Assembly (NCBI GenBank): GCA_002269645.1 | Contig: NIVC01001012.1 | Span: 75,553 to 139,552, forward strand | Origin: Macrostomum lignano | Lineage: Eukaryota | DNA length: 64,000 nucleotides | Direction of reading: 5' to 3' | In this document: one piece after another, positions 37,395 through 64,000 of the stretch | Numbering within the stretch: the stretch's first letter is position 1 | How the letters are laid out: each line of letters begins with the position of its first letter | Notes under the pieces: generated by a model | What the model was told of the DNA's origin: nothing | Database searches by the model: none | Seen by the model: only the letters and a program-made list of their open reading frames with translations | Translations under genes and position numbers: made by a program

Positions 37395-37523
37395 TTATGA
37401 GGCAGCAACAACCCAAAGTACAGTGTTAGTTGGATCTTCCAATAAAGAAATAAAACTGGATTTCCAGCTAGCAGACTCCAACATTATCACTAATTTTGTC
37501 TCTGTAGCTAGCTCTGTTATTAG
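37395..37523 (-). pseudogene. Paralogue Z: isolated terminal (tail) exon
   Basis: TTGATCAG|LITELATETKLVIMLES..KSSF..EDP*, homologous to 51138-51275. Confidence 0.55.
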
Positions 37524-40500
37524 CTGATCAAGCGATTCTGTGTTCTCAGAGTTCTGTCAGAGTTCAGAGTTCTGTGGAGAAGAATAATATGCTTTTTGTT
37601 GCTGTAAATTAATAGTTATAAGTTATTGGAGGGCTCACTCAAATGTTGACCCTCTTTAAAGTCTTCCGTTAGAACATTAAATATTTTGTTTCTTGCCACA
37701 TTGCCACCTATTAGTGCAGAGATTGATCGCAACGAAAATTAAAGAAATCGATTTTTTGAGTAATTTGAAGGTTACAATCCGAATAAATTGATGTCGATCA
37801 CTGCATTAAATCATAAATTCAATTAAATTGACAGCTTCATTCCTGAAAATACAGACTTTTCCTAAGAACAGCCCAGGTAGGACAGTCCCATAAAGGACAG
37901 AACCATAATCAGTATGACGCATTCCAAGCATTCAACCCACCCCGAGCAAAAACTGGAATCCGCTACAGAAATCCCAGTTTGGTGCAAGAAATTGAGCATC
38001 GCATCACTCACAGTTGAAGTGCAGCAGACAGCAGCAGAAGAGTCGCCAGGCTTCTGCCAATCGTTATCTGCAGATTCAGCCGCATGCCGCACTTCCTGCA
38101 CCTAAAAATCGCGATGAGGGTTGAGCGCAGCATGCTGATAATATGTCTGCGTTAGCATTTATAGGTGAGACGTGAGACTGCCAACATGGAAATTCGAAAT
38201 GACATCAAACTTTGCAATACGAGCGTACTTTTAGGTGATCTGATTTCTGTTCTCGTATCCGTAAGTAGTAACAATTACCTTTTCTAAACCCAACCCTGCT
38301 AACCAGGATATTCTGTAATAAAAGCGTGTGGATTTGACTTTTTATTTGATTTTTAATTTAATTTTGCATCTCTAGGTGAGACAGAGTCTTTTCTAAAAGA
38401 TGCTACGGACAAGATACTACACATGTACATATAATACATTGAAAATTCATGGCATCTATTTGAATTTAACGATCATTTAGCAGTAGATATACAATACACT
38501 ATCAAGGACCACTAGCAGTATATGATCCGATCTTAGAGTTTAGCGTCCTGATATGCTGCTAGTGGACCTTGTACACTATACACATAAGCCCCATAAAGAT
38601 TCGAGAACGAGAATGGCTGTTCTTTGAACAAAAGCAGGAAATTTTCTGGGAACAGAGAAAGATTTTGTTAAAATAATGCAGCTAATACTCGTACCTAAGC
38701 GAATTTACCCTTTCTCTCCTACGTCCTTCTCAAACAAATATAATTTGGTAAATAGGATTGTTTAGCATAGCCAACAAGTAGTGCTCAAATTTCTTAAAAA
38801 CTAACGTGCACGAAACTCACTTTCTCAATGAAGCCCAAATTACAGCTCAAAGTCAATTCCGTGGCTTTTCTATGGAAATTTAATCAGTAGAATTGTTTGA
38901 GTAGTGTTGAATTAAAGCAGTGCGAGTCTGTGCGCGCTCTTCATTGTTGCCTCTCAGTTAGCTCAATCTATAGCTAACTAATAGACTACGTACCCGGCCC
39001 TTCAGCTCAAAGCACTCGACTGCAAGGAATAAGATTACGCTCGTACAAGCGTGTAACGTTGGTCTGGCTGATGTCCCTGCTGTCTAAGCTAAAGGATTAA
39101 ACGTTTATTTATTTATTTTCTTAATTAACAGGGACTGTGGTGCACAAACAACATTAATTTCGCCGCTCTTTTTTGTCTCTTTGGTGGAAAATTTAGCTAA
39201 AACTTTGGGGCACGCTTTACATTCACAAGCCTTCCAATTTCTTCAGATTCTGCATTAACAAGATTTTACGTTCCCTAAATGTTTCATTCCCAAATATTCT
39301 CACTCTCAAGATAGCTTTCTTCTGATTTTACATTCCCCAGATTTCACATTCGCTTCAGAGTTCACATTCCCCAGATTTCCCATTCCTTGTCTTTCACATT
39401 TCTCAGATTTCGCCAGCCTCATGTATGTGTCGCGGGTTCGCACCTTGCCCTGCCTGGATTGCCCAGCAAGATTTTTCAAACTTTATATGCATTTTCCCAG
39501 CAGGAGAACACTAATAATTTTGCTCCGGTCATGGGGAGTCAGTCAGACGGAATTTGTCGCAGTCTCGAAAATGCCCGTCGTGCAGGTAAAAGCCTTTGGT
39601 TTTCTATTCCTTAAAAACATAAATTAATACTCGCAGCTTATCTTGCCAGCTTGATGCTGCCTTCAGGACATGTACAATACATAAGTATACAATAGTACAA
39701 TTATGACATGGTAATTTCAGTCGGTTGGTTATGACATTCCGAATTTGTAAAATCAATGCAGCAGCTACAGCCTTAATTTGAGATGCTTTAGCAACTGCGT
39801 CACATCTTAAATGTTTTTACTATTACAACGCGGCTCGTATTTATGCAAATAATCAATTTTCCCTACAGAATTTTTACAATCTTACAGCTGCATCATTATT
39901 AAATTCCATAATTATTCTTCTTTCTCATTTTTGTTGTATTTATTTTTATTTAATTTAGGTATTAATTAAAGGAAGTTTTTCGATTGCCTACTTTCTAGAT
40001 TATTCTTGGAAGTACGACGTATCTCTGTGACTACCTTAATCATCATTCACTTTGTTATCAGCTTGCATAATTCTTGAATAGCTTCATTTCTGCTGGATTC
40101 TTAAAGTGACAGGTTAATCAATATTTTTTTTTATAAAATTTCGTTGGCATATGCAGCAATATACGCTTGTAAATTCACACCAATTACAAACTTAAGTTTC
40201 GCAGACAGATAAAAAGATAAACTACAGATAAGATGAGATACAGATAAAATGGTTAGGTTAGTAGGTCAAATGTTAAACAATGCCCAAAATTGTCCATGCA
40301 CTCGTTTTTTTCACCACTGTTTAATTCAGCAACAAACTAAGCAGTCAATCCTTATTCCACACATCTTTCGCGTTAGTGCAGTGAAAACATCAAAAGATGT
40401 GTGGATGGATAAGGTAAAGCAGTGAATGAATTCTAAGTAAATGAAATATTTATAATATTTACAGCGATTACAGCATTTATAAAGCAGAAAAATAGTTGCA

Positions 40501-40535
40501 TAATAGTGACAGCATAAGTGTACAGTGATCACTCG

Positions 40536-40660
40536 CAGCTGGCAGGCCACGTCATCCGCGCCGAGGCCTACTGTCCGGAGCCGGTGCAGGAGGTGCTGCT
40601 ACTTACGTTGCAGGCACCCTACCGGCGGGGACAGGCGAGGACTCGGCGCTACGTCGACTT
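40536..40660 (+). mobile_element. RTE-like LINE 3' fragment
   Basis: QLAGHVIRAEAYCPEPVQEVLLLTLQAPYRRGQARTRR matches the 30.4-30.6 kb copy. Confidence 0.85.
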
Positions 40661-43050
40661 TCTGCGTTCCCTTCGAAGTCTGCGTTCGCTAAGCTTCGAA
40701 GAGCGCCATCTGACGCTGCTTTTTGCGAACCGGCAGCGTACTCTGTTGTTGTTGTTGTAGCCTTTGTCAGGGTGATGGGTGTCACTACGTCCGTAATGGG
40801 CACATGGGTTGACTTTGTGGAGGGCGGAGCATTCAGCTACGACGTCTGAGGCGCGACGAACCAAAGATTTTTCAGAGTCGGATTGGCAGACCTCAAACCT
40901 TCCTCCTTTTTCAAACGGGCTTAAGAGCGTTGCTGCCGTATATTGAAGGTTCTTCTTGTGCTTTCTTCTCACAAAAAGTAGCGTCGCAGTAAAGATAAGT
41001 GCTAACAGAGTCGTAGCAAAAGCTCCAAGCAGAACCATGCTCAGCACACTCATCTCTTCAAGACTGGGACTTAGTCTCTTCTTAGACTTAGACTTAGTCC
41101 CTTCAGTCTGTTCTTCTTCCGCAGCCGGCTGGGCAGCCGCAAGCATCCAGCTGAGCACAGGTTGACTTGAGTTTCCGCATCTGTTTCCTGCCGCATCCGG
41201 GAAGCTGATCAGAGCCGTAAGCTGCTCACTGCAGTCCGTGAAGCTCACCAGCCCGAGTACGTCACCATCAATGGTAAGATTGACAGCTCTGAGCGAGCCG
41301 CAGGAGACTGAGGAGTTCTTAGTCTCGACAACATGGTACCTGGAATTCAAGTGTCAGGAGTTTGTGATTTGTATGTGACTTGACTAGCAAGCAAGGTTAA
41401 CAAAATTTGAGACTGCTGATTCTCAAGTCAAGAAACTCACAGCTTATCAGCATCCTCGAACTCAGCTATTTTGCAGCCAGCTTCTGCCCCGCAGTTCAGG
41501 TAGAATACCTTCTTGGTCCTGTGCTCATAGAACAGTCCGATGCGAAGCCTCTGAGCGAGATTCAGCGGCTCCTTGCTGCGGGTGCTCAGGCCGGAGCCGA
41601 CGCGAGTTCGCTGGCCTGGAGCCGGTGTTCAAGGGGAGTGAAATTGTGCAAGAGTTAAGCTGTGCTGCCTATCTAAAACTCGTGCTTTTGTCACTAAAAT
41701 GATATTGTTCGTTTTAGTCCATACTACTGCGAGTAAGATTAGCTCGAAAGAGTAGCAATACGCTATTTTATGGCTGATTCTATCCCTACTGGGCTCAAGT
41801 CTCGTTGTGCTTAAAAAGCCACCGGTTCACTACAGCTTACTCTTTGTGACGAAGTTCTGCAGAGCTGCGGAGCTGCTGAAGCTGGCGAGCCTCATGACTC
41901 CGCTGTCAGCGCTCATCGCAGCCAGCTCAGCAGTCAGGGACCGACGAACCGATCCAGTGGTGTAGCAGTTGCTCTCAAAATTTGTAATGTTTCTGCAGCA
42001 GAATCCCGGCTCCATCAGCCGAATTTGTAGACCTGGGATATTCGCTGAGCTTCTCCGACTCAGCCGGAATGAGACCGTCAGGTAGCTCCTACAGTTTTTA
42101 TGTAGAGTACAGTGGTTGAGTTCAATTACAGAATTATGGATTTCAAAAAATCGGTCCAGCATCAAGCCAGCTCTATCGTACCCTTTCGTCAGTTGCAGCA
42201 CGCGCAGCATCTCCAGCTCCACGGGCTTTGGCTCGCTTGTTGAAGGCGACGAGCAAGTCGCTGAAAAGTTCAAGTTCCATTGGGAGTTGACTGCGTTTAT
42301 CTAGTACCGGCTAGAAGTCAGTAGTGGGGCATTAAAACAAAATTCTCGCTCACACTTGCCATTCAACAAGTGCAGACTTCACTACTGCACAAAGCATTTA
42401 TAAGTAGGCGTGAAGTTCAATTTTATCATCTCTACTGTTTGATTTTAACTTCCTCAAACTATATAACTCTTTATAACTCTAAGAGAGTTATTAACTCTCT
42501 TCGTTTGGCTACCAGACGGCTAATTAGATGCTTTATTATCTATATTGAGCCTTTTGTTGGTAATTAACTGAATGAACGTTATTGAACAGTTTTTAGATGT
42601 TCTGTTTCTAGCAAAAGAGTAACTTATGAGTAAGAGTAAAAGAGCAAAAGAGTAAATAGACAAAATCGAATATTATTATTTATTCACTAACTGTGCTCAA
42701 ATCTATGCTTACAGTCCGAAGCCTTCGAGTGCAGTTCGTATCGCATCGGTTGTTGCTGTGCAGCTGAATCTACAGATCTTTTCCACCTCCGCTCGCTTAG
42801 GTGCGCCTCCGTGTCAAAGCCAGTCAGAACCACTACGACTTTGTCAAGGTGGTCAGTCAGAATCTTCCATTTGCAGTTGAGCCCTTCCTCAGGCACAGGG
42901 TCCGCGTCAGTTTTAGGAATGATTCGATCTTCAGTGAACTCAAGGCTGAGCTGGAACTCATTGGTGTTGCCACGCGGATAGCAGTACTGGTTGCCTGCAA
43001 GAGCTCTGTGGATAAGAAGAATGAGGAGGAGTAGATTTTTTGTAAATGGA
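40649..43050 (-). CDS. Paralogue A: short cadherin-like/CTLD-like/TM receptor (exons ~42713-43050, 41841-42300, 41441-41615, 40649-41339)
   Basis: Signal-like LLLLILLIHRALAG; EC-like TDADP..NCKWKI..FDTE..YEL.SKASD; NCY..LASFSS; TM VLSMVLLGAFATTLLALIFTATLLFVRR. The last three exons splice in frame; the first junction is unresolved. Confidence 0.6.
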
Positions 43051-43566
43051 CAGTGAAAAGTTGTTGGAAGGCTCAGCTCACTTAAAATTTGGTCTCTTTA
43101 ACGTTATTTTCTGAGCTATTATTGGCAAAATGGGTTGTTGATTATGCGATTAATTGGCTTTTTGGCCGGTATTTCAGTTATTTCTCGCATACGAAACTGT
43201 TAAATAATATTTTATATTCTACGAGTAATAATATATAGAGTGTATGATCACAACCTACTATTATTATTAGCTACGCCCATGAACATGAAGAAATGTCATC
43301 GATTTTGTGACAACATTCTAGCTGAAATCAATACGATAAAATAGTTGTGTACTTACTATCCTACTGATAGTAAAAAGACAAAAAAATCTTGAGTGAAAAA
43401 CAAGTGCTGTTTAACCCACAGAACTGTTCTGCGGTTTAACCAGCTACAGTTGTTCAATGGTATAATTCAATTAACTTTCGTACAATAATGTACGACATTA
43501 ACAGCGCCAGCCCCACCAAGGGGCAGTCCCCAAAAAAGACAGCACCAAAAAGGACAGTGCCCCAAG

Positions 43567-43832
43567 CAGTATGACACCCCAATCATTATGATGACCCAAT
43601 CAGTATGATGACCCAATCAGTATGATTACCCAATCAGTATGATGACCCAATCAGTATGATGACCCAATCAGTATGATGACCCAATCATTATGATGACCCA
43701 ATCAGTATGATGACCCAATCAGTATGATGACCCAATCAGTATGATGACCCAATCAGTATGATGACCCAATCAGTATGATGACCCAATCAGTATGATGACC
43801 AAATCAGTGACGCCCCAATCAGTATGACACAC
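43567..43832. repeat. 17-bp minisatellite (ATCAGTATGATGACCCA)n
   Basis: Direct. Confidence 0.93.
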
Positions 43833-44333
43833 CCAAAGTGTGGCATCCAAAAGCATTTAAACCACACCAATCAAAACCTGAAATCCGCTACAGAAATCCC
43901 CGCTGGTGCAAGAAATTAAGCATCGCATCACTCACATTTGAAATGTGGCAGACAGCAGCAGAAGAGTCGCCAGGCTTCTGCCTATCACAATCTGCAAATT
44001 CAGCCGCATGTCGCTCACTTCCGGCACCTAAAAATCGCGATGAGAGGTGGGCGCAGCATGGAGATTCTGTGTCTGCGCCAGCATTTATACGTAAGACGTG
44101 AAACTGCTGAACAAGGATATTCGTAAATTGCATCAAACTTCTTGTACGCGTACTATACGAAATTTCTAATTTTAGCAATCTGATTTCTGTTTTAGTACCC
44201 GGATGTAGTGACACATTTCTTGGCTTTTAGCTCGTAGTTTACCTAACCCTGCTGCCAAGGAATTTTAGCTGTAAAATCGTGTAGATTTAATTCTTTCTTT
44301 GATTTTAAATATAACATTGCATCTGGTGAGACA

Positions 44334-47092: not shown

Positions 47093-47779
47093 CACAAGCC
47101 AGGAGAGTGAAGCAGAAGGACGCACGCTTCTTGTACCAAAGCAGTTTCCAAAGCAGCATGTACTGTTCGCTGTACGCCCCCCCCCCCAAAGTCAAGTGCT
47201 GTACAAAAAAGGAACTTCAGTTTTGTTCCAAGTACTTTAGATTTTTTTGTTGTTATTTTGAAAGGTTGCGAAATAAATGAATACGCAATATATGGTACAG
47301 TTCCCACAAAAAGCTCTTAATCAATAGACTTATCGCACAGCTCAAAGCACTCAACTGCAAGGAATAAGAATATAAGCATGTGAAATTACGTCTGAGTCTG
47401 GCTGGCGTCCCTGTCTAAACCAAGGGATTAAAAGTTTCATTTTTAATCTTTCTTTTAGTTTAGTTCAACAACTGCGGGCTCAAGGTACTGTAGTGCACAA
47501 ACAGCATTAATTTCGCTGCTCTCATTTTGTACCTTAGGTGGACATGTTAAGCTAGAATTTTAGGGCACTGGGTATGTTTCAAATTGCCCCAAATTTACAT
47601 TCCCTAAATTTTACATTTCGCAAGTTTTACGTTCTCAAATTCTAGATTCCTTAGATTTCCCTGGCTTCGTAAGGATCGAAGCATCAATTAGATACGCTGT
47701 CAGATTCCTTAGACAGCAGCGGCACAGGGCGCGCCTCTGGGCACCACCACCACTTTGGCCATTCTTGGCCCCAACAACA

Positions 47780-48442
47780 GCCCCTTGGTGCTAAAGCCCC
47801 TTGGTGCTAAAGCCCCTTGGTGCTAAAGCCCCTTGGTGCTAAAGCCCCTTGGTGCTAAAGCCCCTTGGTGCTAAAGCCCCTTGGTGCTAAAGCCCCTTGG
47901 TGCTAAAGCCCCTTGGTGCTAAAGCCCCTTGGTGCTAAAGCCCCTTGGTGCTAAAGCCCCTTGGTGCTAAAGCCCCTTGGTGCTAAAGCCCCTTGGTGCT
48001 AAAGCCCCTTGGTGCTAAAGCCCCTTGGTGCTAAAGCCCCTTGGTGCTAAAGCCCCTTGGTGCTAAAGCCCCTTGGTGCTAAAGCCCCTTGGTGCTAAAG
48101 CCCCTTGGTGCTAAAGCCCCTTGGTGCTAAAGCCCCTTGGTGCTGGCGCCCCTTGGTGCTAAAGCCCCTTGGTGCTAAAGCCCCTTGGTGCTAAAGCCCC
48201 TTGGTGCTAAAGCCCCTTGGTGCTAAAGCCCCTTGGTGCTAAAGCCCTTGGTGCTAAAGCCCCTTGGTGCTAAAGCCCCTTGGTGCTAAAGCCCCTTGGT
48301 GCTAAAGCCCCTTGGTGCTAAAGCCCCTTGGTGCTAAAGCCCCTTGGTGCTAAAGCCCCTTGGTGCTAAAGCCCCTTGGTGCTAAAGCCCCTTGGTGCTA
48401 AAGCCCCTTGGTGCTAAAGCCCCTTGGTGCTAAAGCCCCTTG
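47780..48442. repeat. 16-bp minisatellite (GGTGCTAAAGCCCCTT)n, ~41 copies
   Basis: Direct. Confidence 0.96.
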
Positions 48443-49268
48443 TTGCTGGTTCTGACGCCCAAAAGTACCGGGGTGATAACAGAATGCTTGAGATACCAGC
48501 TGAGGATGTCCAGCAGCTCCGCCTGGGTGAAGCCTAGTGACTAACGAATGCAGAGCTGATGCAGACACATGTGGTCGACGTGTTGATGAAATTTGGAGGC
48601 TTGGCAAGGCTGCACTGAGGCGCAGTGCTGATTGGCGCACAGGGGTGTACTGAATGCACTGGCGCTTATGGGAAAAATCCGACCTTCTGGCAGAATCGTC
48701 AAATATCTCGACGGTCCGGAGGGCTGGCGACTTGATTCTTGTTTGAGAAGGTGCGCAACAAAATTTTTGCCTGTGTTATTGAATTTCGTATGCCTGCGTT
48801 GCTCCAGTACGGCGCAGAAAAAAATTGTCAGGGGGATACCCCCTCTGGGTAGTTCTACTGTTAATTAAGTTCTCGGATTTTTTATCGTTACTTAATTTTA
48901 TTTTCTTCCTCGTTATTGTTTTATTTCCTCTTACAAATGTTTGATCCAGGGATTACATTTTCGATTGCCTTCTTTCTAGATTCTTGAAAGTAGCTCTCTG
49001 ACTACCTTGATCATCGATCACTTAATCAGAGTGCATAATTCTTGAATAACTGGATTCTTCAAGTGACATCTTAATCAATTTCGCTTATTACTGGTAAAAT
49101 TTATATTGTAATTCCTATATACGCTTGCAAATTGATACACTTTTATTACAAAAGTTAATAAATGGTTAGGATACAATAATAGGTTAGTACGTAAATGTGG
49201 CTTAGTTCCGAAATTCTCAATGCGTTCGATTATCGGGCCACTACTTCGTATTAACTTAGTTACGAGCG

Positions 49269-49438: not shown

Positions 49439-49673
49439 TACGAGCGTACATATTAAACAGTGTACTATTATTCCACACTTACTTCACTCTACTGCAAATA
49501 TAAGGAGGCGTGGATGGACAATAAACGTAACATGACAGGTCCGGTGATGAAATTTGTACATGGGCTAAGTGTACATTGGGGAGCTACTGAGGAACAATGG
49601 GCATGTTTTGCAAATGTATCTGGGTAGAAGTATTCTGGACAGAAGCTCGTGCAGCCTCCATGACTTCTCTCCA

Positions 49674-51230: not shown

Positions 51231-53490
51231 AGCTGTCATGGATAATTCTGTATCTGTTGCTAGCTCTGTTATTGGCTGATCAAGCCAACAAGATAAGCAG
51301 GGCAAAATGCGAGCTAAAAGGCTTTCAATCTTTTTATGTGTGTGTTCTACCCTTGGTCAGGTTGCCAGGGAAAGGTGCTGATTATTGCGTCACTCTGTTT
51401 GCATGACACCTAAGACGCTGCCTCCGTTACACCAGAGGTTTTCCAGAGTCAGAGTGGCAGACCTTATCAAACCCTCCTCCTTTTTCAACCGGGCTTGGGA
51501 CCGTCTTTGGCGGAGTTACTGCTCTATATTGAAGGCATGGCCGTCGACCCATAAAAAGTAGCATCAAAGTAAAGATAAGTGCTAATAGAGTGGTAACAAA
51601 AGCCCCAAGCAGAACCATACCCAGCACACTCATCCCTTCAGGACTGGGACTTAGTCTGTTCTTAGACTTAGAGTTAGTTCCTTCGGTCTGTTCTTCTTTC
51701 GCAGCCGGCTGGGCAGCCGCAAGCATCCAGCTCAGCACAGATTGGCTCCAGTCTCCGCATCTGTTTCCGGCCGCATCCGGGAAGCTGATCAGAGCCGGAA
51801 GCTGCTCACTGCAGTCCCTAAAGCTCACCTGCCAAAGTACCTCACCACCAGCTCCCACATTGACAGCTCTGAGCGATCCGCAAGAGACAAAGGAGTTCGT
51901 AGTTTCGACAGCATGGTACCTGGAATTCAAATTCCAGGAGTGTGAAGGTATAAACTAATTAGAGAGCCAATTGCTGTGAATGAAAATAAACTTTTGTCGT
52001 CAAGTTAAGAAACTCACAGCTTATCAGCATCCTCGAACTCAGCCATTTTGCAGTCTTCTGCCCCGCAGTTCAGGTAGAAGACCTTCTTGGTCCTGTGCTC
52101 ATAGAACAGTCCAATGCGAAGCCAATGTGCAAGATTCAGCGGCTCCTTGCTGCGAGTGTTCAGGCCGGAACCGACGCGAGTTCGCTGGCCTGAAGCCGGC
52201 GTTTAAGTGGAGTGAAATTGTGTAACATTTAAAATGTGCTTCCTATCCCAAACCCATGTGCATTTGTGCAAATATGTGCAAAAGCCACCTCTTAACTCCA
52301 GCTTACTCTCTGTGACGAAGTTCTGCAGAGCCGCGGAGCTGCTGAAGCTGGCGAGCCTCATGACTCCGCTGTCAGCGCTCATCGCAGCCAGCTCAGCAGT
52401 CAGGTTCCGATGAACCGATCCTGTGGTGTAGCAGTTGCTCTCAAAATTTGTAATGTTTCTGCAGCAGAATCCCGGCTCCATCAGGCGAATTTGTAGACCA
52501 GGGATATTCGCTGAGCTACTCCGATTAAGCCGGAATGAGACCGTCAGGTAGCTCCTACAGTTTGATGTAGAGTACAGTGGTTGAGTTCAATTACAGAATT
52601 ATGGATTTCAAAGAATCGGTCCAGCATCAGGCCAGCTCTATCGTACCCTTTCGTCAGTTGCAGCACGCGCAACATCTCCAGCTCCACGGGCTTTGGCTCG
52701 CTTGTTGAAGGCGACGAGCAAGTCGCTGAAAAGTTCAAGTTCCATTGGGAGTTGACTGCGTTTATCTAGTACCGACTAGAAGTCAGTAGTGGGGCATTAA
52801 AACAAAATTCTCGCTCACACTTGCCATTCAACAAGTGCAGACTTCACTACTGCACAAAGCATTTATAAGTAGGCGTGAAGTTCAATCTTATCATCTCTAC
52901 TATTTGATTTTAACTTCCTCAAACTATATAACTCTTTATAACTCTAAGAGAGTTATTAATTCTCTTCGTTTGGCTACCAGACGGCTAATTAGATGCTTTA
53001 TTATCTGTATTGAGCCTTTTGTTGGTAATTAACTGAATGAACGTTATTGAACAGCTTTTAGATGTTCTGTTTCTAGCAAAAGAGTAACTAGACAAAATCG
53101 AATATTATTATTTATTCACTAACTGTGCTCAAAGCGCTGCTTACAGTTCGAAGCCTTTGAATGCAGTTCGTATCGCATCGGTTGTTGCTGTGCAGCTGAA
53201 TCCACAGATCTTTTCCACCTCCGCTCGCTTAAGTGCGTCTCCGTGTCAAAGCCAGTCAGAACCACAACGGCATTGTCAAGATGGTCAGTCAGAATCTTCC
53301 ATTTGCAGCTGAGGCCTTCCTCAGGTACAGGGTCTCCATCAGTTTTGGGAATGATTCGATCTTCAATGAACTCGATTTTTTTGCTGAGCTGGAACTCATT
53401 GGTGTTGCCACGCGGATAGCAGAACTGGTTGCCTGCCAGAGCTCTGTGGATAAGAAGAATGAGGAGGAGTAGGATTTTTTGTAAATGGAC
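51138..53490 (-). pseudogene. Paralogue B of the cadherin/CTLD/TM receptor (1-bp frameshift in CTLD exon near 52565)
   Basis: Colinear with A; TM VLGMVLLGAFVTTLLALIFTLMLLFMGRR; tail exon 51138-51275; CAGTTTGATG versus CAGTTTTTATG in A. Confidence 0.6.
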
Positions 53491-54720: not shown

Positions 54721-55227
54721 ACGCACCCAAAGTGTGGCATCCAAAAGCATCTAAACCACCCCAATCAAAACCTGAAATCCGCTACAAAAATCCCAGTTGG
54801 TGCAAGAACTTGAGCATCGCATCACTCACATTTGAAATGTGGCAGACAGCAGCAGAAGAGTCGACAGGCTTCTGCCTATCACAATCTGCAAATTCAGTCG
54901 CATGTCGCTCACTTCCGGCACCTAAAATTCGCGATGAGAGGTGGGCGCAGCATGGAGATTCTGTGTCTGCGCCAGCATTTATAGGTAAGACGTGAAACTG
55001 CTGAACAAAGATATTCGTAAATTGCATCAAACTTCTTGTACGCGTACTATACGAAATTTCTAATTTTAGCAATCTGATTTCTGTTTTAGTACCCGGATGT
55101 AGTGACACATTTCTTGGCTTTTAGCTCGTAGTTTACCTAACCCTGCTGTCAAGGAATTATAGCTGTAAAATCGTGTAGATTTAATTCTTTCTTTGATTTT
55201 ATATGTAATGAAGCATCTGGTGAGACA

Positions 55228-55427: not shown

Positions 55428-56564
55428 GTGAGACAGACTCAGCCTTTGCTCTTACTTACCTGAACATACTTATACTCTAGTGACTCTAATGAACCCCGGT
55501 AGCTATGTACGCTCGTATGTACGTGTACTGCATGTACACTCGTATTACAAAGAAATCATCGCGTACGTTGAATTCGAAAATCATTTAGCAATCGAAGTAC
55601 AATACACAATACACAGCCCCTAATCGAACGACAGTGGAAAATTCCGTGGGAACAAAAAATATTTTGTTTAACATTCTTAACTACTATTTTGCTTCCTTCT
55701 ATCTTTCCTCAATTAAATATCATTTGACAAAAGGGGACACTTAAAAACTATGGTAACTAAGTGTGCACGAAACTCAACTCACTGTCCATGTGGACTCACT
55801 CACCAAGAGATTTTGGCCAACTCCAACTTCCTGCAGACTTTATACAATAAAATTTAGGAAGGGAGCACCACGGAAAACCCATGATTTTACAGGCGAAGCC
55901 GCGGTAACTCTGTGGCAGATCCAAGTAAAATCCAAGTAAAACCCACGGCTTTTCCGCGGCGAATGTTTCTCTTAAAGCAGTTGGAATTTGCCCCTCCTTT
56001 CAAGTACAACTAAAAGGCAATTCCATGGCTCTCCCATGGAAATTCAGTCAGTAGAATTATTTAAATAGGGTTGGAGTGTGAGTGTATGCACAGTTGCCGC
56101 CCTATTGTACGAGTACGTAGCATGCCAGGAAAGAGAGACAGAAGAGATCTGTATCGTTCATGCGCTTTCAGACCAAGCATGAACTGTTCTCTGTACGCCG
56201 CCTAACGCTCTACGTTCGTACAAAAAAGGGAACTTCAGTTTTTTCTGTGAACTTTAGAGTTCTTTATTTATTGTTCAAAGCTCAAAGCCCAAAGGCAAAG
56301 CAGTCAACGGCAGGGAATGATTACAAGCATTTGACATACGTAGGGTCTGGCGGATGTCATTGTCGTCAAAGTTGAGACTAAAATTTTCTTTAGTGGTTCA
56401 CAAGGGTCTTCAGAATGTGTTTATGAATTCTTCTTTTAGTTCAGTTCAACAACTGCGAGCAGTGCGAGCTAAAAGTGCTATGGTGCAGAAACAGCTTGAA
56501 TATAAGTTTCGTCGCTCTCATTTTGTCTTTTCTGGTGGAAAACTTTAGCTAGAACTTTAGGGTA

Positions 56565-56915
56565 TGTTTCACATTCCTCAGATTTACATCTCCCAGATTT
56601 CACATTCCAGATTTTAAAAATTTCTCAGATTTGACATTCCCTCAGATTTAAAATTCCGCAGATGTCACATTCCCCAGATTTAAAATTCCGCAGATTTCAC
56701 ATTCCGCAGATTTCACATTCTGCAGATTTCACATTCCCCAGATTTCACATTCCCCCAGAGTTCACATTCCCCGAAATTCACATTCACCAGAATTCCCATT
56801 CCCCAGATTTTGCATCAACAGATTTCACATTTCCCAGATTTAACATTCCTTGCATTTCACGCTCACCATATTTCACATTCCCAAGATTTTACGTTCCAAA
56901 AATTTTACATTCCCC
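56565..56915. repeat. Degenerate (ATTCCCCAGATTTCAC)-type array
   Basis: Variant units visible. Confidence 0.75.
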
Positions 56916-57115: not shown

Positions 57116-58869
57116 CCAAACTCAAAGCTATTTTTAGCAACACATCTATAGAGAGCCATCTGCATGTGCAAGTACAAGGAGATTCTCTGGTCTGTGCGGA
57201 ACGCTCCTGGATTTTTAAACGTTATTAACAGGTTTTTCCCTATTATCTTCTGCTTGCATGGCAGAAAGACTTCAAACACACTGGCCTCTAAAGGCCCTAT
57301 TATGAGTGTGAGGCTCACAGCTCAGAATTCGCAGTACTGAACATTATTCAAAGCAGTGTATCTTATAGTCAACTAAAACGCATACGCACAATGCAGAAGT
57401 AATGAATATTTTGAGCGGGGTAGGCTTAGCGCTCACGCAGTTTCTCTCTGTGCTGTTTTTATGGCAATTATCAACCCCGCCTCTCAACACATTTTGCTGC
57501 GAGTCTTCTGTGTCACGCGTTCGCAGGCTACTGGCTTGGCCCTCAAATCTCAGATTCGTTATTGTCATTTGGGCATTGAGATCGGCTTCTTAAGCTGGTC
57601 TGTTTGGATAGGTTTGGTCAAGATGAGTAGAGGTTGTTGTTTTTTCCACTTCGATGCAAGCGCTTTTCCGGTGCTTACAGACAGGTATTAAAAGAATGAA
57701 AGAAACTGCAAATGATAACACGAACAAGTTTTGTAACTTAGATACTTACTGAATGTTATCTTACTTTTTATTTTCTTTCTTTCTAATCTCTTTCCACTTT
57801 CTTACTAATCTCTTCTTTGATTAAAAAGATCAGGAGCGTGGCCACGGAAGGGCCAAAGGGCGATCCGGCCCTCCAAATAGGCTGGCAAAGCTAATGGCTG
57901 AGTACCTACTGACTTGGCGCCTCTTCAGCAGGTTTGGCGCTTCTTTTCCCAATTCTAGCAGTTCCCCCGACCACCACTTTGGCTACTTTGGCCCCAACAA
58001 CAGCCCTTGGTGCTGGCGCCCCTTGGTGCTGACTCTCATTGGCTCAAAAGTACCGGGGTGATAACGGAATGCTTGAGATACCAGCTGAGGATGTCCAGCA
58101 GCTTGCCTACTGGATCTCGCTTGATCATCGAAACTAGATAAATTTGCAACAGCGTGTCTATAGTCACCTGGTGCCACCTGTGGAAGGTCCAGAAGCTCCG
58201 CCTGGGTGAAGGCTAGTGACCAACGAAGTAAGAGCTGATGCGGACACATGTGGTCGACGTGCTGATGAAATTTGGAGGCTTGGCAAGGCTGCACTGAGGC
58301 GCAGTGTTGATTGGCGCACAGGGGTGTACTGAATACACTGGCGCTTATGGGAAAAATCAGACCTTCTGGCAGAATCGTCAAATATCTCGACGGTCCGGAG
58401 GGCTGGCGACTTGATTCTTGTTTGAGAAGGTGCGCAACAAAATTTTTGCCTGTGTTCTTGAATTTCGTATGTCTGCGTTGCTCCAGTACGGCGCAGCAAA
58501 AAATTGTCAGGGGATGCCCCCCTCTGGGTAGTTCTACTGTTAATTAAGTTCTCGGATTTTTTATCGTTACTTAATTATATTTTCTTCCTCGTTATTGTTT
58601 TATTTCCTCTTACAAATGTTTAATCCAGTGATTACATTTTCGATTGCCTTCTTTCTAGATTCTAGATAAATATTTCCGATATTTGCAGAGATTTACAGCA
58701 TTTAAACAGCAGAACAGTAACAGCATAATTATACAGTCATCACTCGCATGTAACAGCATATTTCTCATTCAATCCTCTTATAGTTTCAATGAAGAGCTTT
58801 GAGGCTGTGAACTATTATTCTTACGATTAGTAAAGCTTAGTTAACACCAACAACTAAAACACAAAATCT

Positions 58870-59240
58870 TCAAACCTGACATCTACTCGATGAAGCCGAT
58901 GAGGAAGTGAAGCTGGATTTCGAGTAATCAGACTCCATAATTATGGATAGTTTGGTCTCTTTTGCAAGCGCGGCTATTGGCTGATCAAATACGAGCTAGA
59001 GTTGACTGGCGAACCAAAATCAGACTCATTCTTTTAGGACTGCGACTTGCTTGTTCTTAGCTCGTATTCTGCAGTTGGCTGGGCAGCCGCAAGCATCCAG
59101 CTGAGCACAGGTTGGCTCGAGTTTTCTCTCTTAATTATCATCTCTTGTTGGCTCTTATCATCAATGATAAGATTGACAGTTCTGAGTGAGTCACAGAAGA
59201 CTGAGGAGTTTGTACTCAAAGCAGTATGGTTTCTATGGTA
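58870..59240 (-). pseudogene. Paralogue C: TM exon with the TM deleted plus tail exon; upstream exons absent
   Basis: SSQPVLSWMLAAAQP..SQS* followed by TTGATCAG|PIAALAKETKLS..ESD.SKSSF. Confidence 0.6.
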
Positions 59241-59254
59241 CGTTTGGTACTTTT

Positions 59255-60186
59255 GGCAGTCAAATTGTGGCAGTCAAATTGTGGCAGTCAACTTGTGGCA
59301 GTCAAATTGTGGCAGTCAAATTGTGGCAGTCAAATTGTGGCAGTCAAATTGTGGCAGTCAAATTGTGGCAGTCAAATTGTGGCAGTCAAATTGTGGCAGT
59401 CAAATTGTGGCAGTCAAATTGTGGCAGTCAAATTGTGGCAGTCAAATTGTGGCAGTCAAATTGTGGCAGTCAAATTGTGGCAGTCAAATTGTGGCAGTCA
59501 AATTGTGGCAGTCAAATTGTGGCAGTCAAATTGTGGCAGTCAAATTGTGGCAGTCAAATTGTGGCAGTCAAATTGTGGCAGTCAAATTGTGGCAGTCAAA
59601 TTGTGGCAGTCAAATTGTGGCAGTCAAATTGTGGCAGTCAAATTGTGGCAGTCAAATTGTGGCAGTCAAATTGTGGCAGTCAAATTGTGGCAGTCAAATT
59701 GTGGCAGTCAAATTGTGGCAGTCAAATTGTGGCAGTCAAATTGTGGCAGTCAAATTGTGGCAGTCAAATTGTGGCAGTCAAATTATGGCAGTCAAATTGT
59801 GGCAGTCAAATTGTGGCAGTCAAATTGTGGCAGTCAAATTGTGGCAGTCAAATTGTGGCAGTCAAATTGTGGCAGTCAAATTGTGGCAGTCAAATTGTGG
59901 CAGTCAAATTGTGGCAGTCAAATTGTGGCAGTCAAATTGTGGCAGTCAAATTGTGGCAGTCAAATTGTGGCAGTCAAATTGTGGCAGTCAAATTGTGGCA
60001 GTCAAATTGTGGCAGTCAAATTGTGGCAGTCAAATTGTGGCAGTCAAATTGTGGCAGTCAAATTGTGGCAGTCAAATTGTGGCAGTCAAATTGTGGCAGT
60101 CAAATTGTGGCAGTCAAATTGTGGCAGTCAAATTGTGCAGTCAAATTGTGGCAGTCAAATTGTGGCAGTCAAATTGTGGCAGTCAA
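59255..60186. repeat. 14-bp minisatellite (GGCAGTCAAATTGT)n, ~66 copies
   Basis: Direct; gives the spurious SNCGSQIVAVKLWQ ORFs. Confidence 0.97.
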
Positions 60187-62077
60187 CTGCCACAGACTCA
60201 ACTAAATGTGCACGAAACTTAACTCATTGTCTCTGTGTACTAACCAAAAGAAGTTTCTCTGCTTCTTGCAATATTTGCAAATTTTGATGGGGGTAGCAAC
60301 CGTGGCAAACGCATGATTTTAATTACAGGTGAAGCTGCGGTAACTCTGTGGCAAGTCCAAGTGAAACCCACGGCTTTTCCGCGGATTTTTCTTCTGTGAA
60401 TAAGTCTCCAAGTACTTTTAAAAGGCCATTCCATGGCTTTTCCATGGAAATTTAGCCGATACAATACAGGAATGCGGATCTATGCCGCCGAGTACTATGC
60501 GAGGAAAGAGAAGCAGAAGGACGCACGCTTCTTGTACCAAAGCAGTTTCCAAAGCAGCATGCACTGTTCGCTGTACGCCTCCCCCCCCCAAAGTCAAGTG
60601 CTGTACAAAAAGGAACTTCAGTTTTGTTCCAAGTTACTTTAGATTTTTTTGTTGTTATTTTGAAAGGTTGCGAAATAAATGAATACGCAATATATGGTAC
60701 AGTTCCCCAAAAAAGTTCGTAGTTAATAGACTCATCTCACGGCTCAAAGCACTCAACTGCAAGGAATAAGATTATAAGCATGTGAAATTACGTCTGAGTC
60801 CGGCGGATGTCCCTCTCGTCTAAACTAAGGGATTAAAAGTTTATTTTTGTAATCTTTCTTTTAGTTTAGTTTCACAACTGCGAGCTCAAGGTACTGTACG
60901 TGTGTGCACAAACAGCATTAATTTCGCTGCTCTCATTTTGTACCTTAGGCGGACATCTTAAGCTAGAATTTTCGGGCACTGGGTATGTTTCAAATTACCC
61001 CATATTTCATATTTTCCAGATTTCACATCCCTGAATTTTACATTTCTTACATTTTACATTCCCCAAATATTACGTTCCAAATTCTACATTTCTTTGATTT
61101 CCCTGGCTTCGTAAAGAAGCATCAATAAGATTACGCTGTCAGATTACTTAGACGGAAGCGGCACAGGGCGCGCCTCTGACCAGGTCGTGAAGGATTGTCA
61201 CGTCGCCGACCGAATCCGGTACATTAACGTCAGCCAGCAGGCTGCAAACAAGGCGCGAAGCCGCGATACGCGGCCTGCCTGCTTGTGCCAGCTGGACGCC
61301 GCCCTCACCCCATGTACGCAGGGGCGAACCCCAGAGCTATTTTTAGCAACACATCTGTAGAGTACAACTTGGGGATTCTCTGGTCTTTTCTGAAGGCTCC
61401 TTGATTTTTAAAACGTTATTAACAAGTTTTTTTCCTGTTATCTTATTATTGCATCGCTGAAGGACTTCAGCGATGTAATAATAACACACTGGCCTCCAAA
61501 AGCCCTATTGAGCGCGAGGCTCACAGCTCAGAATTCGCAGTACCGAATATTATTCAAAGCAGTGTATCTTATAGTCAACAAGAACGCATAGGCACAATGC
61601 AGAAAATGAATATTTTGAGTTGGGTAGAGTTAGCGCTCCTGCAGTTTCTCTCTGTGCTGTTGTTAAGGCAACCATCAACCCCGCATTTTGCTGGGAGTCT
61701 GTGTCACGCGTTCGTAGGCTGCTAGCTTGGCCCTCAAATCTCAGCTTCGTTATTGTCCTTTGGGAATTGAGGTCGGCTTTCTTAAGCTGTCTGTTTGGAT
61801 AGCTTCATGGTCAAGACGAGTAGAGGTCGTTGTTTTTCCACTTCGATGCAAGCTCTTTTCACCACCAAGCTCTTTTTCGGTGCTTACAGTTATTAAAAGA
61901 ATAAAAGAAACTGCAGATGACAAAATAAACATATTTTGTAACTTATATACTAATTTTATCTTACCTTCTATTTTCCTTCTATCTAATTTCTTTCCACTTT
62001 CTTATCAATCTCTTCTTTGATTAAAAAAGATCAGAAGCGTGCCAGGGAAGGGCCCTCCAAATAGGCTGGCAAAACTA

Positions 62078-62730
62078 AAGCCCCTTGGTGCTGGCGCCCT
62101 TGGTGCTGGCGCCCCTTGGTGCTGGCCGCCCTTGGTGCTAAAGCCCCTTGGTGCTAACTTGGTGCTGGCGCCCTTGGTGCTGGCGCCCCTTGGTGCTAAA
62201 GCCCCTTGGTGCTAAAGCCCCTTGGTGCTAAAGCCCCTTGGTGCTAAAAGGTGCTAAAGCCCCTTGGTGCTAAAGCCCCTTGGTGCTAAAGCCCTTGGTG
62301 CTAAAGCCCCTTGGTGCTAAAGCCCCTTGGTGCTAAAGCCCCTTGGTGCTGGCGCCCTTGGTGCTAAGCCCCTTGGTGCTGGCGCCCCTTGTGCTAAAGC
62401 CCCTTGGTGCTAAAGCCCCTTGGTGCTAAAGCCCCTTGGTGCTAAAGCCCCTTGGTGCTAAAGCCCCTTGGTGCTAAAGCCCCTTGGTGCTAAAGCCCCT
62501 TGGTGCTAAAGCCCCTTGGTGCTAAAGCCCCTTGGCTAAAGCCTTGGTGCTAAAGCCCCTTGGTGCTAAAGCCCCTTGGTGCTAAAGCCCCTTGGTGCTA
62601 AAGCCCTTGTGCTAAAGCCCCTTGGTGCTAAAGCCCTTGGTGCTAAAGCCCTTGGTGCTAAACCCTTGGTGCTAAAGCCCTGGTGCTAAAGCCCTTGGTG
62701 CAAATAAGCCCTTGTGCTAAAGCCCTTGTC
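62078..62730. repeat. (GGTGCTAAAGCCCCTT)n, ~41 copies with many indels
   Basis: Direct. Confidence 0.95.
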
Positions 62731-63908
62731 CTGGCGCCTCTCATTGCAGTCGTCCCTGAAAGGCACAGCCCCAATAAAAAGCCTAAAAGCTGAAAACCCT
62801 GATATGATGAACTCCAAACCAGGTCCGGGAATTTTAGAACTTGACGATAAAACATTTCGTCGAATTTCTGACTCCCACCACTGGGTAGAGATGCAGCTTC
62901 AAGACACTTTGTACAAAGAAATGAAGCCCGAACACTAACTACATCTAGATTTAATACTCTGTTGTCTAAAGATAAAAAAGGTTAAATTCGCATCATTCTA
63001 ATAATCCCGTACAGAAATCCGACACACGTGAGCTGCAGTAAACGCAGGTACTTTTACAATGCAGGGACGTTCAGCCAACGTCGTTATTCGTCGGTGGCAA
63101 TGCGCCCATTTGTCGGATTCTATGGGCACTCGTTATGATCTTTTCATAATGAAATGCACAATACATTCAATTATTCTTCCCTGTTATTCTACTTACCTTT
63201 ATTCTTATTCAACTCAGGGATGACTTACAGGCAGTTTTTCGATGCCTACTCATCAAGAATATCTTGAAAGAGCTCTCTGCTACCGTAATCACCGATAATT
63301 GAGATATTAGATTCACAATTCTTGAATTACTGCGTTTGCTGGATTCTTCAAATGACAGGTAAATCAGTTTTTATTATACGACGCTCGTAAATTCACACTA
63401 ATTCAGGTACACTTGCATTAAAATCATAAATTTTGCAAATGTTAAGTATACAACTGCTACGATAGATTAGTGCGAAACACTCAGTCTCAATGCACTCGTT
63501 TATCAGCCACTACTTATTTAATTAACTCAGCTAAATGCATTAAACAGTCTACCATCATTTCACACTTCGCTAACGGTAGTGAATAGATAAAGAGGGTACA
63601 AGACAAAACATTGGTAAATGTGCTTTAGGGAGCAACTTTGGGAAGCAATGAACACCAAATAATGAAATGTACAGAAATTTTACACAAAATAAACATTACA
63701 ATGCCCGATGCGAGCGTATTTGTCGTATTTATACAGCAAAGTTATTATTCTGCAACAAAAGCGGCATATTTACAAAGCAATTAACTGGTATATTTACATA
63801 GAACTGGCATGTTTCTCACTCAGTGGGCTGTGTTGAAGCTCTTCATTGAACTTCTGAAGACTTTCTTTTTGCTGCTCAGGAGGCAATTGAAGGTTTTTAC
63901 TTTTTAGT

Positions 63909-64000
63909 TCACAAGTTAACAGCAGCAGCAACATCCCCAAAATACGGTTTTGTTGGATCTTCCGATGAGAAAGTGAAACTTGATTTCGGCTGATCAGACT
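63909..64000 (-). CDS. Paralogue E: tail exon end (gene continues beyond the window)
   Basis: ESDQPKSSFTFSSEDPTKPYFGDVAAAVNL*, identical to copy B. Confidence 0.5.
   Translation of the reverse strand, partial: SDQPKSSFTFSSEDPTKPYFGDVAAAVNL

What the first reader, a model, noticed from the sequence alone, without database searches (positions are those of the whole stretch)
37395..64000. Tandem birth-and-death cluster of short paralogues of the same receptor
Seen: five same-strand copies (Z tail only, A, B, C, E) inside mosaic segmental duplications. A and B show synonymous differences in the first exon (cac cta/cac tta, gta/gtg, tcg/tca), supporting coding function. Inference: a fast-evolving multigene array of the kind seen for recognition or immune-type receptors.
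Basis: partly seen in the sequence, partly recalled or inferred. Interest (0 to 1): 0.72.

Follow-up and report, generated by a model that had tools for sequence, protein, structure and literature searches.

The report
Tandem flatworm lectin-like receptor gene cluster
This stretch of the flatworm Macrostomum lignano genome holds a tandem cluster of a worm-specific membrane-protein family, with two intact genes and three broken or partial copies, which is a clear but ordinary case of genes being duplicated, patched from one another and lost.

Summary
The duplications are real. The genes lie on the minus strand, and the sequence is Macrostomum lignano.

Contents of 37395-64000:
- **A (44009-40649) and B (54903-51427):** two intact six-exon genes of 519 and 454 aa, all introns GT-AG.
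- **Z:** an intact signal-peptide exon (38085-38012) joined to 3' flank. A 2.76-kb deletion removed exons 2-6.
- **C (59040-59231):** a fragment of the last exon.
- **E:** only its 3' flank (62493-64000). Its body starts about 200 bp past the window end.

The proteins have a signal peptide, a CUB-like beta-sandwich, a divergent C-type-lectin-like domain (CTLD), one transmembrane helix and a short variable tail. The domains rest on a predicted structure and weak profile matches, with no Pfam hit. Every credible homologue found is from M. lignano.

Exons stay 86-100% identical between paralogues (92-100% for exons 1-5), while introns range from 49 to 100%. Ectodomain dN/dS is 0.15-0.64. Each gene is a patchwork of conversion tracts. 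An independent contig shows the same E-C-B order.

A birth-and-death tandem array is supported. A fast-evolving or immune function is not shown: the ectodomain is under purifying selection, and the membrane-spanning and cytoplasmic parts vary most.

The parts
43936..44009 (-). Gene A exon 1 (start codon and signal peptide, 74 nt, GTGAGT donor)
   Evidence: Motif search and splice context. HMM E=8e-9.
42713..43005 (-). Gene A exon 2 (first half of the CUB-like domain).
   Evidence: tblastn of P0002 gives 95% identity. dN/dS 0.18.
42182..42260 (-). Gene A exon 3
   Evidence: The boundary matches the splice used in annotated proteins (…LTKG|SYLTV…).
41841..42088 (-). Gene A exon 4 (end of the CUB-like domain and start of the CTLD)
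41441..41615 (-). Gene A exon 5 (middle of the CTLD)
   Evidence: There is an in-frame 3-nt indel against B.
40649..41339 (-). Gene A exon 6 (end of the CTLD, stalk, transmembrane helix, cytoplasmic tail). The distal tail is frame-shifted by a 7-bp insertion at about 40823-40829 and runs on into unrelated sequence next to a repeat fragment.
   Evidence: The repeat fragment 40536-40665 is an inverted copy of 30463-30592.
54830..54903 (-). Gene B exon 1 (signal peptide)
53145..53443 (-). Gene B exon 2
   Evidence: 100% identical to P0004 by tblastn.
52647..52725 (-). Gene B exon 3
52307..52554 (-). Gene B exon 4
   Evidence: The 1-bp indel against A lies in intron 3, so B is not frame-shifted.
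52018..52189 (-). Gene B exon 5
51427..51919 (-). Gene B exon 6 including the stop codon. The tail contains LQYRAV, an ITIM-like LxYxxV motif.
   Evidence: 98% identical to P0004.
38012..38085 (-). Relic Z: an intact exon 1 with a GTGAGT donor. No exons 2-6 follow it.
37402..37565 (-). Relic Z deletion junction (37565/37533) and a remnant of the non-coding 3' flank (37402-37533, matching 51154-51285). The 2.76 kb holding exons 2-6 in contig L002 is replaced here by 31 bp.
59040..59231 (-). Relic C: a fragment of exon 6 (CTLD end and stalk; family profile positions 292-318 and 347-371). It has no transmembrane segment and sits inside a 79-codon ORF (59037-59273).
62493..64000 (-). 3' flank of copy E (94% identical to 49673-51229, the flank downstream of B). 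The gene body is outside the window.
41814..42640 (-). Recent gene-conversion tract between A and B (matches 52280-53089). It is 96.8% identical, and introns 2 and 3 differ by only 2-3%, against 32-40% divergence in introns 4 and 5.
43561..43827 (.). 17-bp minisatellite in intron 1 of A. Its counterpart 53869-54689 lies in intron 1 of B.
47779..48447 (.). 16-bp minisatellite in the A-B spacer. The same unit recurs at 49673-49924 and 62075-62725, at the edges of duplicated blocks.
59254..60186 (.). 14-bp minisatellite (67 copies, 99% matches) directly abutting relic C
13396..17307 (-). Distant same-strand family member Y, outside the finding. Exon-like ORFs at 16903-17307, 16086-16355, part of 14444-15460, and 13396-13962.
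   Evidence: Family HMMs, (E=5e-29, 4e-9, 1e-8).

Best explanation
The region is part of a head-to-tail array, with a period of about 11 kb, of a Macrostomum-restricted gene family on the minus strand.

Each intact gene has six exons and encodes a type I membrane protein of about 450-520 aa. The parts are a signal peptide, a CUB-like beta-sandwich, a divergent C-type-lectin-like domain without the canonical Ca2+/sugar motifs, a short stalk, one transmembrane helix, and a cytoplasmic tail with a conserved portion of about 40 aa that has no known signalling domain.

The array evolves in three ways:
- Unequal crossing-over duplicates units. The duplicated blocks are bounded by shared 14-17-bp minisatellites.
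- Gene conversion or recombination between paralogues leaves every gene a mosaic.
- Copies are lost by deletion and truncation (Z, C).

A and B are functional genes under purifying selection.

Shown: anatomy, intactness, constraint, mosaicism, relics, restriction to M. lignano in the databases searched, and a predicted fold.

Inferred: the proteins sit on the cell surface and bind an extracellular ligand through the CTLD/CUB-like ectodomain, in recognition or adhesion. Signalling, if any, would go through partners or short tail motifs that differ between paralogues.
For: - **Organism and family.** Nine hits, all M. lignano, at 63-88% identity. B is essentially BOX15_Mlig008400g2: 4 differences in 1365 exon nt and 1 in 726 intron nt.
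- **Gene models.** Six exons, all introns GT-AG, consistent phases, ORFs of 519 and 454 aa.
- **Constraint.** A vs B ectodomain dN/dS is 0.31. Introns 4 and 5 are 32-40% divergent while the flanking exons have dS of 0.17-0.26. Across six genes, exons are 86-100% identical (92-100% for exons 1-5) and introns 49-100%. Over 21 pairs, the CUB-like region gives omega 0.15-0.38 and the CTLD 0.35-0.64.
- **Mosaicism.** Intron 5: A vs L002_g1 100%, A vs B 60%. Intron 2: A vs B 98%, A vs L002_g1 88%. Intron 4: B vs L002_g1 94%, A vs L002_g1 75%.
- **Relics.** Z deletion. The Z-equivalent in L002 has a TAC>TAA stop. C fragment.
- **Independent contigs.** Four Mlig_3_7 contigs carry similar arrays. L001 has the same E-C-B order.
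- **Fold.** The AlphaFold2 model has pLDDT 70, pTM 0.66, and CTLD blocks mostly 80-94. Foldseek matches CTLDs (NKR-P1, NKG2D, Mincle, LOX-1; target TM 0.6-0.72, probability 1.0) and CUB domains (neuropilin, C1r, PCPE-1). In PDB profile searches, 18 of 18 and 26 of 29 weak hits are CTLDs aligned on the C..F.g.CY…LAS.S motif, best E=0.006.
- **Restriction.** A full HMMER scan of 1.84 billion representatives gave 20 hits. The 10 looked up by name were 9 M. lignano proteins and one spurious bacterial repeat protein, and three more were already known as M. lignano. A CTLD profile search gave 23 hits, all M. lignano.
- **Transcription.** The GenBank models of Mlig_3_7 derive from RNA-seq transcript assemblies (PMC5730564).
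Against: - No Pfam family, including Lectin_C and CUB, matches any member, even at E up to 1-10.
- The CUB-like assignment has no sequence support from the PDB and only moderate fold scores (target TM 0.42-0.51).
- The structure is a prediction from a 20-sequence, single-species alignment. Only one of the five models reached pLDDT 70.
- No expression data for the window's own copies was examined.
- A's distal tail is frame-shifted relative to its closest relative.
- Ligand, cell type and function are unknown.
Confidence: 0.8

Rival explanations
1. The copies are an assembly artefact or uncollapsed haplotypes/subgenome copies of a single gene in this neopolyploid genome.
For: The Mlig_3_7 assembly is known to be redundant, with 180 Mb in blocks at least 95% identical (PMC5730564). 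M. lignano carries three subgenomes (PMC10733133). The region is rich in minisatellites.
Against: - A and B differ far more than subgenomes do. Reported SNP divergence between subgenomes is 1.4-2.4%. A and B are 60% and 72% identical in introns 5 and 4, have different intron lengths, and have dS of 0.15-0.26.
- They lie head to tail on one sequence, separated by unique spacer.
- The independent contig L001 shows the same E-C-B order, and three further contigs carry multi-gene arrays.
Confidence: 0.03
2. It is a rapidly diversifying immune or recognition receptor array, like NK-complex lectin-like receptors or C. elegans clec genes, with positive selection on the ligand-binding surface.
For: - CTLD fold, tandem array with relics and copy differences between contigs, and lineage restriction.
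- There is a local patch of raised replacement, pN/pS about 0.9, at residues 310-329. I infer that this corresponds to the beta3-beta4 face of the CTLD.
- The tails differ between paralogues, and some carry an ITIM-like LxYxxV motif.
Against: - Ectodomain dN/dS is well below 1 in nearly all pairs.
- The CTLD core is nearly invariant among eight close paralogues.
- No sliding window with meaningful divergence exceeds 1 in the ectodomain.
- There is no EPN/QPD or WND motif.
- No expression or induction data was examined.
Confidence: 0.15
3. The copies in this window are all decaying pseudogenes, and the constraint signal only reflects recent duplication or conversion from functional copies elsewhere.
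For: - Z and C are clearly dead.
- The Z-equivalent in L002 carries a stop codon.
- A's distal tail is frame-shifted.
- Gene conversion is active.
Against: - A and B keep complete ORFs and all ten splice sites each.
- Exons 5 and 6 are conserved next to introns that are 32-40% diverged, which conversion alone does not explain.
- Indels within the exons of A vs B are in multiples of three.
- B is almost identical to an RNA-seq-derived annotated gene.
Confidence: 0.05

Closest known systems
Vertebrate NK-gene-complex C-type-lectin-like receptors (Ly49/KLRA, NKG2/KLRC, NKR-P1/KLRB, CD69, LOX-1)
   Same: The predicted CTLD fold matches these best (Foldseek target TM 0.6-0.72; weak PDB profile hits to CD69 and NKG2A). 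The canonical Ca2+/sugar motifs are absent, as in these receptors. From general knowledge, they also form tandem clusters with pseudogenes, gene conversion and copy-number differences.
   Different: Those are type II proteins with an N-terminal cytoplasmic tail, are usually dimeric, and have no CUB-like domain. The proteins here are type I, with a signal peptide and an N-terminal beta-sandwich. No common ancestry beyond the CTLD superfamily is shown. The ectodomain here is under purifying selection.
Caenorhabditis elegans clec genes (CTLD proteins, many combined with CUB domains, in tandem clusters)
   Same: An invertebrate, lineage-expanded, tandemly arrayed family combining CTLD and CUB-type modules. 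This comparison rests on general knowledge and was not tested here.
   Different: Most clec proteins are secreted and are recognised by the Pfam Lectin_C and CUB models. The flatworm proteins are membrane-anchored and match no Pfam model. No sequence relationship was detected.
Type I single-pass CTLD membrane proteins (layilin, CD302, chondrolectin) and CUB-bearing receptors (neuropilins, Neto)
   Same: The topology is the same: signal peptide, extracellular CTLD or CUB, one transmembrane helix and a short tail. Neuropilin CUB domains are the top Foldseek hits (E=2e-5).
   Different: Those are conserved single-copy genes across animals. This family is restricted to M. lignano in the databases searched, has many copies, and combines the two folds in one small ectodomain.

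Membership tests
C-type lectin-like domain (CTLD) superfamily | CTLD fold (two helices and two antiparallel sheets) | tested here: met
   In the AlphaFold2 model, residues of about 180-340 have block pLDDT mostly 80-94. Foldseek against the PDB returns dozens of CTLDs at probability 1.0 and target TM 0.6-0.72. This is a prediction, not a solved structure.
C-type lectin-like domain (CTLD) superfamily | Significant match to the curated sequence model (Pfam Lectin_C) | tested here: not met
   No Pfam hit for A, P0004, P0005, P0007 or ten distant members. PDB profile hits are almost all CTLDs but weak, best E=0.006.
C-type lectin-like domain (CTLD) superfamily | Signature residues: the N-terminal Cys pair in 'C…CY', a WIGL-like core motif, and the C2-C3 Cys pair | tested here: inconclusive
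   The invariant columns are C6, C17-Y18, L43-A44-x-F46-x-S48, R83-x-G85 (RIGL in place of WIGL) and C152, with C129 nearly invariant. The Cys of helix alpha1 and its partner are not conserved, judging from the alignment to CD69. Disulfide geometry was not checked.
Ca2+-dependent C-type lectins in the strict sense | EPN or QPD plus WND carbohydrate/Ca2+-binding motifs | tested here: not met
   No such motif occurs in the CTLD of any of seven full-length genes.
CUB domain | Match to the Pfam CUB model or to solved CUB sequences | tested here: not met
   No Pfam hit. A profile of residues 26-176 finds no CUB in the PDB. The UniProt name 'CUB domain-containing' is one of many inconsistent automatic names given to this family.
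CUB domain | CUB beta-sandwich fold | tested here: inconclusive
   The top Foldseek hits are neuropilin CUB-containing fragments (E=2e-5). Single CUB domains (NRP2 CUB1, C1r CUB2) reach target TM of 0.42-0.51, but other beta-sandwiches score similarly. pLDDT in this region is 50-85.
Birth-and-death tandem multigene family | Head-to-tail paralogues on one strand that include intact genes and pseudogenes or relics | tested here: met
   A and B are intact. Z, C and the L002 Z-equivalent are dead.
Birth-and-death tandem multigene family | Copy content differs between haplotypes or homeologous loci | tested here: met
   Exons 2-6 of Z are present in L002 and deleted in the window. Downstream of the B-equivalent, L001 is only 80-90% like the window's A unit. 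Assembly error in either sequence cannot be fully excluded.
Diversifying (immune-type) recognition receptors | Excess of non-synonymous change (dN/dS above 1) in the ligand-binding ectodomain | tested here: not met
   Pairwise omega is 0.15-0.64 in the ectodomain. Values above 1 occur only in the transmembrane helix and tail, or where dS is about 0.02. Site models were not run.
Diversifying (immune-type) recognition receptors | Expression in immune or barrier cells, or induction by challenge | not testable with these tools
   No expression data is accessible. No paper mentions the gene identifiers.
Paired activating/inhibitory receptors | Near-identical ectodomains joined to alternative transmembrane/tail modules, one with an ITIM and one with a charged transmembrane residue | tested here: inconclusive
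   Two clearly different stalk/TM/tail modules exist among paralogues (TM dN up to 0.47). An LxYxxV motif occurs only in B-type tails. No charged residue was seen inside either transmembrane helix (read from the sequences). A six-residue motif is weak evidence.

The most novel reading that the evidence does not exclude
The array encodes an invertebrate analogue of paired lectin-like receptors. Gene conversion would keep a common CUB-like/CTLD ectodomain nearly constant, while recombination shuffles it onto alternative stalk/transmembrane/tail modules. Some of these carry an ITIM-like LxYxxV motif. One ligand-recognition unit would then be wired to different downstream outputs, in a family that arose de novo within Macrostomum.
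Probability: 0.08. Interest if true: 0.6.

Novelty: new member of a known kind. Interest (0 to 1): 0.33.

Why it matters
This is a clean, well-resolved example of how a young, lineage-restricted receptor-like family grows and decays in a neopolyploid flatworm. The evidence covers unequal crossing-over next to minisatellites, patchwork gene conversion, and loss by deletion and nonsense mutation.

It also gives a first structural reading (CUB-like domain plus divergent CTLD, type I membrane protein) for several dozen M. lignano proteins. These are currently labelled 'hypothetical' or carry contradictory automatic names.

M. lignano has transgenesis and RNAi, so the function could be tested directly. 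On present evidence, this is an ordinary tandem gene family, not a surprising system.

Tried and rejected
- **The repeat finder on the whole window** was swamped by an 8-bp microsatellite at 31.6-34 kb. I replaced it with self-BLASTN.
- **A whole-window tblastx** timed out. I replaced it with ORF-level BLASTP and HMM searches.
- **My first four-exon model of A** wrongly read through intron 3 and made B look frame-shifted. The annotated proteins corrected it.
- **Pfam scans** of raw ORFs, full-length proteins and distant members gave nothing usable.
- **The first AlphaFold2 run**, with eight close paralogues, failed at pLDDT 31. Adding distant paralogues rescued it.
- **A profile of the CUB-like region** against the PDB found nothing.
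- **P0019**, the only non-flatworm hit, is a bacterial SpaA-repeat protein and was rejected as spurious.
- **P0009**, the 843-aa 'protein kinase domain-containing' model, is a chimeric prediction. Its first 92 residues are an antisense translation of exon 2, its C-terminal half belongs to a different gene at 25.8-29.1 kb, and it has no kinase hit. This rejects the idea of a longer 'same receptor'.
- **Literature searches** for the gene identifiers, and for CUB or C-type lectin in Macrostomum, found nothing about this family.
- **The 'tail' similarity of Z, C and E** was considered as a possible extra coding exon. I rejected this because B's ORF and its annotated protein end upstream of it.

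Full report
**What the sequence is.** The window is eukaryotic. It is rich in micro- and minisatellites and retroelements. A protein search with a first gene model returned only Macrostomum lignano proteins at 63-88% identity. One of them, P0004 (BOX15_Mlig008400g2), is 98-100% identical to copy B, exon by exon. The window is therefore M. lignano DNA, and the genes of the finding lie on the minus strand.

**Check of the observation.** Self-BLASTN confirms mosaic segmental duplications:
- 40860-44737 matches 51431-55623 at 82-97% identity.
- 45751-47091 matches 55640-56840.
- 47098-47739 matches 60499-61178.
- 48496-48987 matches 58174-58666.
- 49673-51229 matches 62493-64000 at 94%.
- 56819-57894 matches 61001-62078.

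A profile HMM of the family, run against all six-frame ORFs, finds every exon of A and B (E from 1e-9 to 1e-80). They lie in exon 2. The real first exon is a 74-nt signal-peptide exon further upstream.

**Gene models.** With the annotated proteins as a guide, both A and B resolve into six exons. All introns are GT-AG and the phases are consistent.
- A: 44009-43936, 43005-42713, 42260-42182, 42088-41841, 41615-41441, 41339-40649, giving 519 aa.
- B: 54903-54830, 53443-53145, 52725-52647, 52554-52307, 52189-52018, 51919-51427, giving 454 aa.

A 1-bp difference that at first seemed to frame-shift B lies in the 92-93-nt intron 3. A's distal cytoplasmic tail carries a 7-bp insertion relative to its closest relative. 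It then runs on into unrelated sequence, which adds about 65 residues.

**The relics.**
- **Z.** It keeps an intact exon 1 with its GTGAGT donor (38085-38012). Contig L002 is colinear up to window position 37565 and resumes at 37533. The 2.76 kb that carries exons 2-6 in L002 is replaced by 31 bp in the window. In L002 itself, that copy has a TAC>TAA stop in exon 4.
- **C.** At 59040-59231 it is a gapped fragment of exon 6 without a transmembrane segment, abutting a 14-bp minisatellite. The same 79-codon fragment is present, almost unchanged, at three other loci.
- **E.** It contributes only non-coding 3' flank. In L001 its last exon ends about 200 bp beyond the point that corresponds to the window's end.

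**Are A and B real genes?**
- Between A and B the ectodomain has dS 0.17 and dN 0.053, so omega is 0.31. Exon 2 alone gives 0.18.
- Introns 4 and 5 are 32-40% diverged, yet the exons beside them are conserved. Exonic indels are in multiples of three.
- Across six genes from five sequences, exons are 86-100% identical (92-100% for exons 1-5), while introns range from 49 to 100%.
- Over 21 gene pairs, omega is 0.15-0.38 in the CUB-like part and 0.35-0.64 in the CTLD. One low-divergence pair gave 1.97 in the CTLD, with dS of only 0.018.
- Omega approaches or exceeds 1 only in the transmembrane helix and tail. In a sliding window, the only ectodomain patch with appreciable divergence and pN/pS near 1 is residues 310-329.
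- The GenBank models of this assembly come from RNA-seq transcript assemblies (PMC5730564). B's near-identical counterpart is therefore a transcribed gene. I did not examine reads for the window's own copies.

**Mosaic evolution.** The closest relative of each gene changes from segment to segment:

| Segment | Closest pair | Contrast |
|---|---|---|
| Intron 5 | A vs L002_g1, 100% | A vs B, 60% |
| Intron 2 | A vs B, 98% | A vs L002_g1, 88% |
| Intron 4 | B vs L002_g1, 94% | A vs L002_g1, 75% |

The 0.8-kb tract 41814-42640 is 96.8% identical between A and B. This is the signature of gene conversion or recombination among paralogues. Shared 16-17-bp minisatellites sit at several block edges, which would favour unequal exchange. 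That last point is an inference.

**Artefact or haplotypes?** Reported SNP divergence between the three M. lignano subgenomes is 1.4-2.4% (PMC10733133). That is far below the divergence between A and B. The independent contig L001 has the same E-C-B order, with a B gene differing at 5 of 2091 aligned exon and intron positions. Three further contigs carry arrays of one to three genes plus relics. Downstream of B, L001 is only 80-90% like the window's A unit, so the arrangement differs between sequences.

**What the protein is.**
- No Pfam model matches any member.
- A structure prediction from close paralogues alone failed (pLDDT 31). With distant paralogues added it reached pLDDT 70 and pTM 0.66, with the region 180-340 mostly at 80-94.
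- Foldseek against the PDB gives two groups of hits. The first is CUB-containing proteins for the N-terminal part: neuropilins at E=2e-5, and single CUB domains at target TM 0.42-0.51. The second is C-type-lectin-like domains for the second part: NKR-P1, NKG2D, Mincle, LOX-1, Endo180 and DEC-205, at target TM 0.6-0.72 and probability 1.0.
- Profile searches of PDB sequences return almost only CTLDs, aligned on the N-terminal 'C…F.g.CY…A…LAS.S' motif. These hits are weak, best E=0.006.
- The CUB-like part has no sequence support.
- The canonical EPN/QPD and WND motifs are absent.
- A signal peptide and a helix at residues 389-414 give a type I topology.
- The region after the helix has no recognisable domain. 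Its conserved portion is about 40 residues. B-type tails contain LQYRAV or LQYRTV, which fits the ITIM pattern, but other paralogues lack it.

**Distribution.** A full HMMER scan of 1.84 billion representative proteins found 20 hits at E below 1e-3. Of the 10 I looked up by name, 9 are M. lignano and one is a spurious bacterial repeat protein. Three more were already known as M. lignano. A search with the CTLD profile found 23 proteins, all M. lignano. Their automatic UniProt names are mutually inconsistent (CUB, LAM_G, ZP, Tub, Ricin, PilZ, CRAL-TRIO, Vitellogenin and others) and should be ignored. A distant member of the family, Y, lies on the same strand at 13.4-17.3 kb in the window.

**Verdict.** The array is a birth-and-death family with conversion, and it has two functional members in the window.

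The 'fast-evolving immune-type receptor' reading goes beyond the evidence. The ectodomain is conserved, the variable parts are the membrane and cytoplasmic segments, and the function is untested. The most likely role is a cell-surface binding protein acting through a non-canonical CTLD. My confidence is about 0.8 in the anatomy and evolutionary mechanism, and about 0.5 in the receptor or adhesion function.

It is a new, uncharacterised member of a familiar class, and of modest interest.

Noticed in passing
window 13396-17307 (-): A distant paralogue, Y, of the same family lies on the same strand.
   Followed up: partly
window 8640-13352: An LTR retrotransposon with 176-bp LTRs that are 99.4% identical (8640-8815 and 13177-13352) and long open gag/pol/integrase reading frames. 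It looks like a recent insertion, ending about 45 bp from the last exon of paralogue Y.
   Followed up: no
window 1998-5262 (+): A non-LTR retroelement with a 786-codon open frame that reads like a reverse-transcriptase gene, followed by a 370-codon frame. No domain scan was run on either.
   Followed up: no
window 31607-34100: A roughly 2.5-kb array of an 8-bp microsatellite with 25% GC and GC skew of -0.83. It separates the receptor cluster from the upstream genes.
   Followed up: no
window 14444-15500 and 19100-23200: There are kilobase-scale simple repeats. The arrays at 19276-20206 and 22218-23135 are inverted copies of each other at 73% identity.
   Followed up: no
window 24833-29087 (-): An unrelated gene, X, has a signal-peptide ORF (28725-29087) and a transmembrane ORF (24833-25231). 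The part mapped at 25787-29084 corresponds to the C-terminal half of the chimeric UniProt model P0009. It has no hit to the family HMM or to Pfam.
   Followed up: partly
window 40536-40665 and 30463-30592: A 130-bp repeat fragment, inverted and 85% identical, sits at the 3' end of gene A, next to where A's frame-shifted tail terminates. A's 7-bp insertion is at about 40823-40829.
   Followed up: partly
L002 18057-18065 (NIVC01002507.1): The counterpart of relic Z on this contig is a complete six-exon gene apart from a single TAC>TAA nonsense codon at the start of exon 4. It is either a very recent pseudogene or a sequencing error.
   Followed up: partly
window 59037-59273 (-); L001 5630-5866; L003 19698-19934; L004 18987-19223: The C fragment is an open 79-codon frame kept almost unchanged (0-1 amino-acid difference from the window copy) at four loci. 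This is unexpected for a dead fragment unless the loci diverged very recently or the piece is used, for example as an alternative exon.
   Followed up: partly
L004 10001-29025 (NIVC01000712.1): The annotated protein P0005 spans two tandem genes: the N-terminus of one gene and the C-terminus of the next. Annotation in these arrays therefore fuses neighbours. P0009 even includes an antisense translation of exon 2.
   Followed up: partly
window 51427-51560 (-), tails of B-type paralogues: An ITIM-like motif (LQYRAV or LQYRTV) is present only in B-type cytoplasmic tails. Two distinct stalk/transmembrane/tail modules are distributed among paralogues that have near-identical ectodomains.
   Followed up: partly
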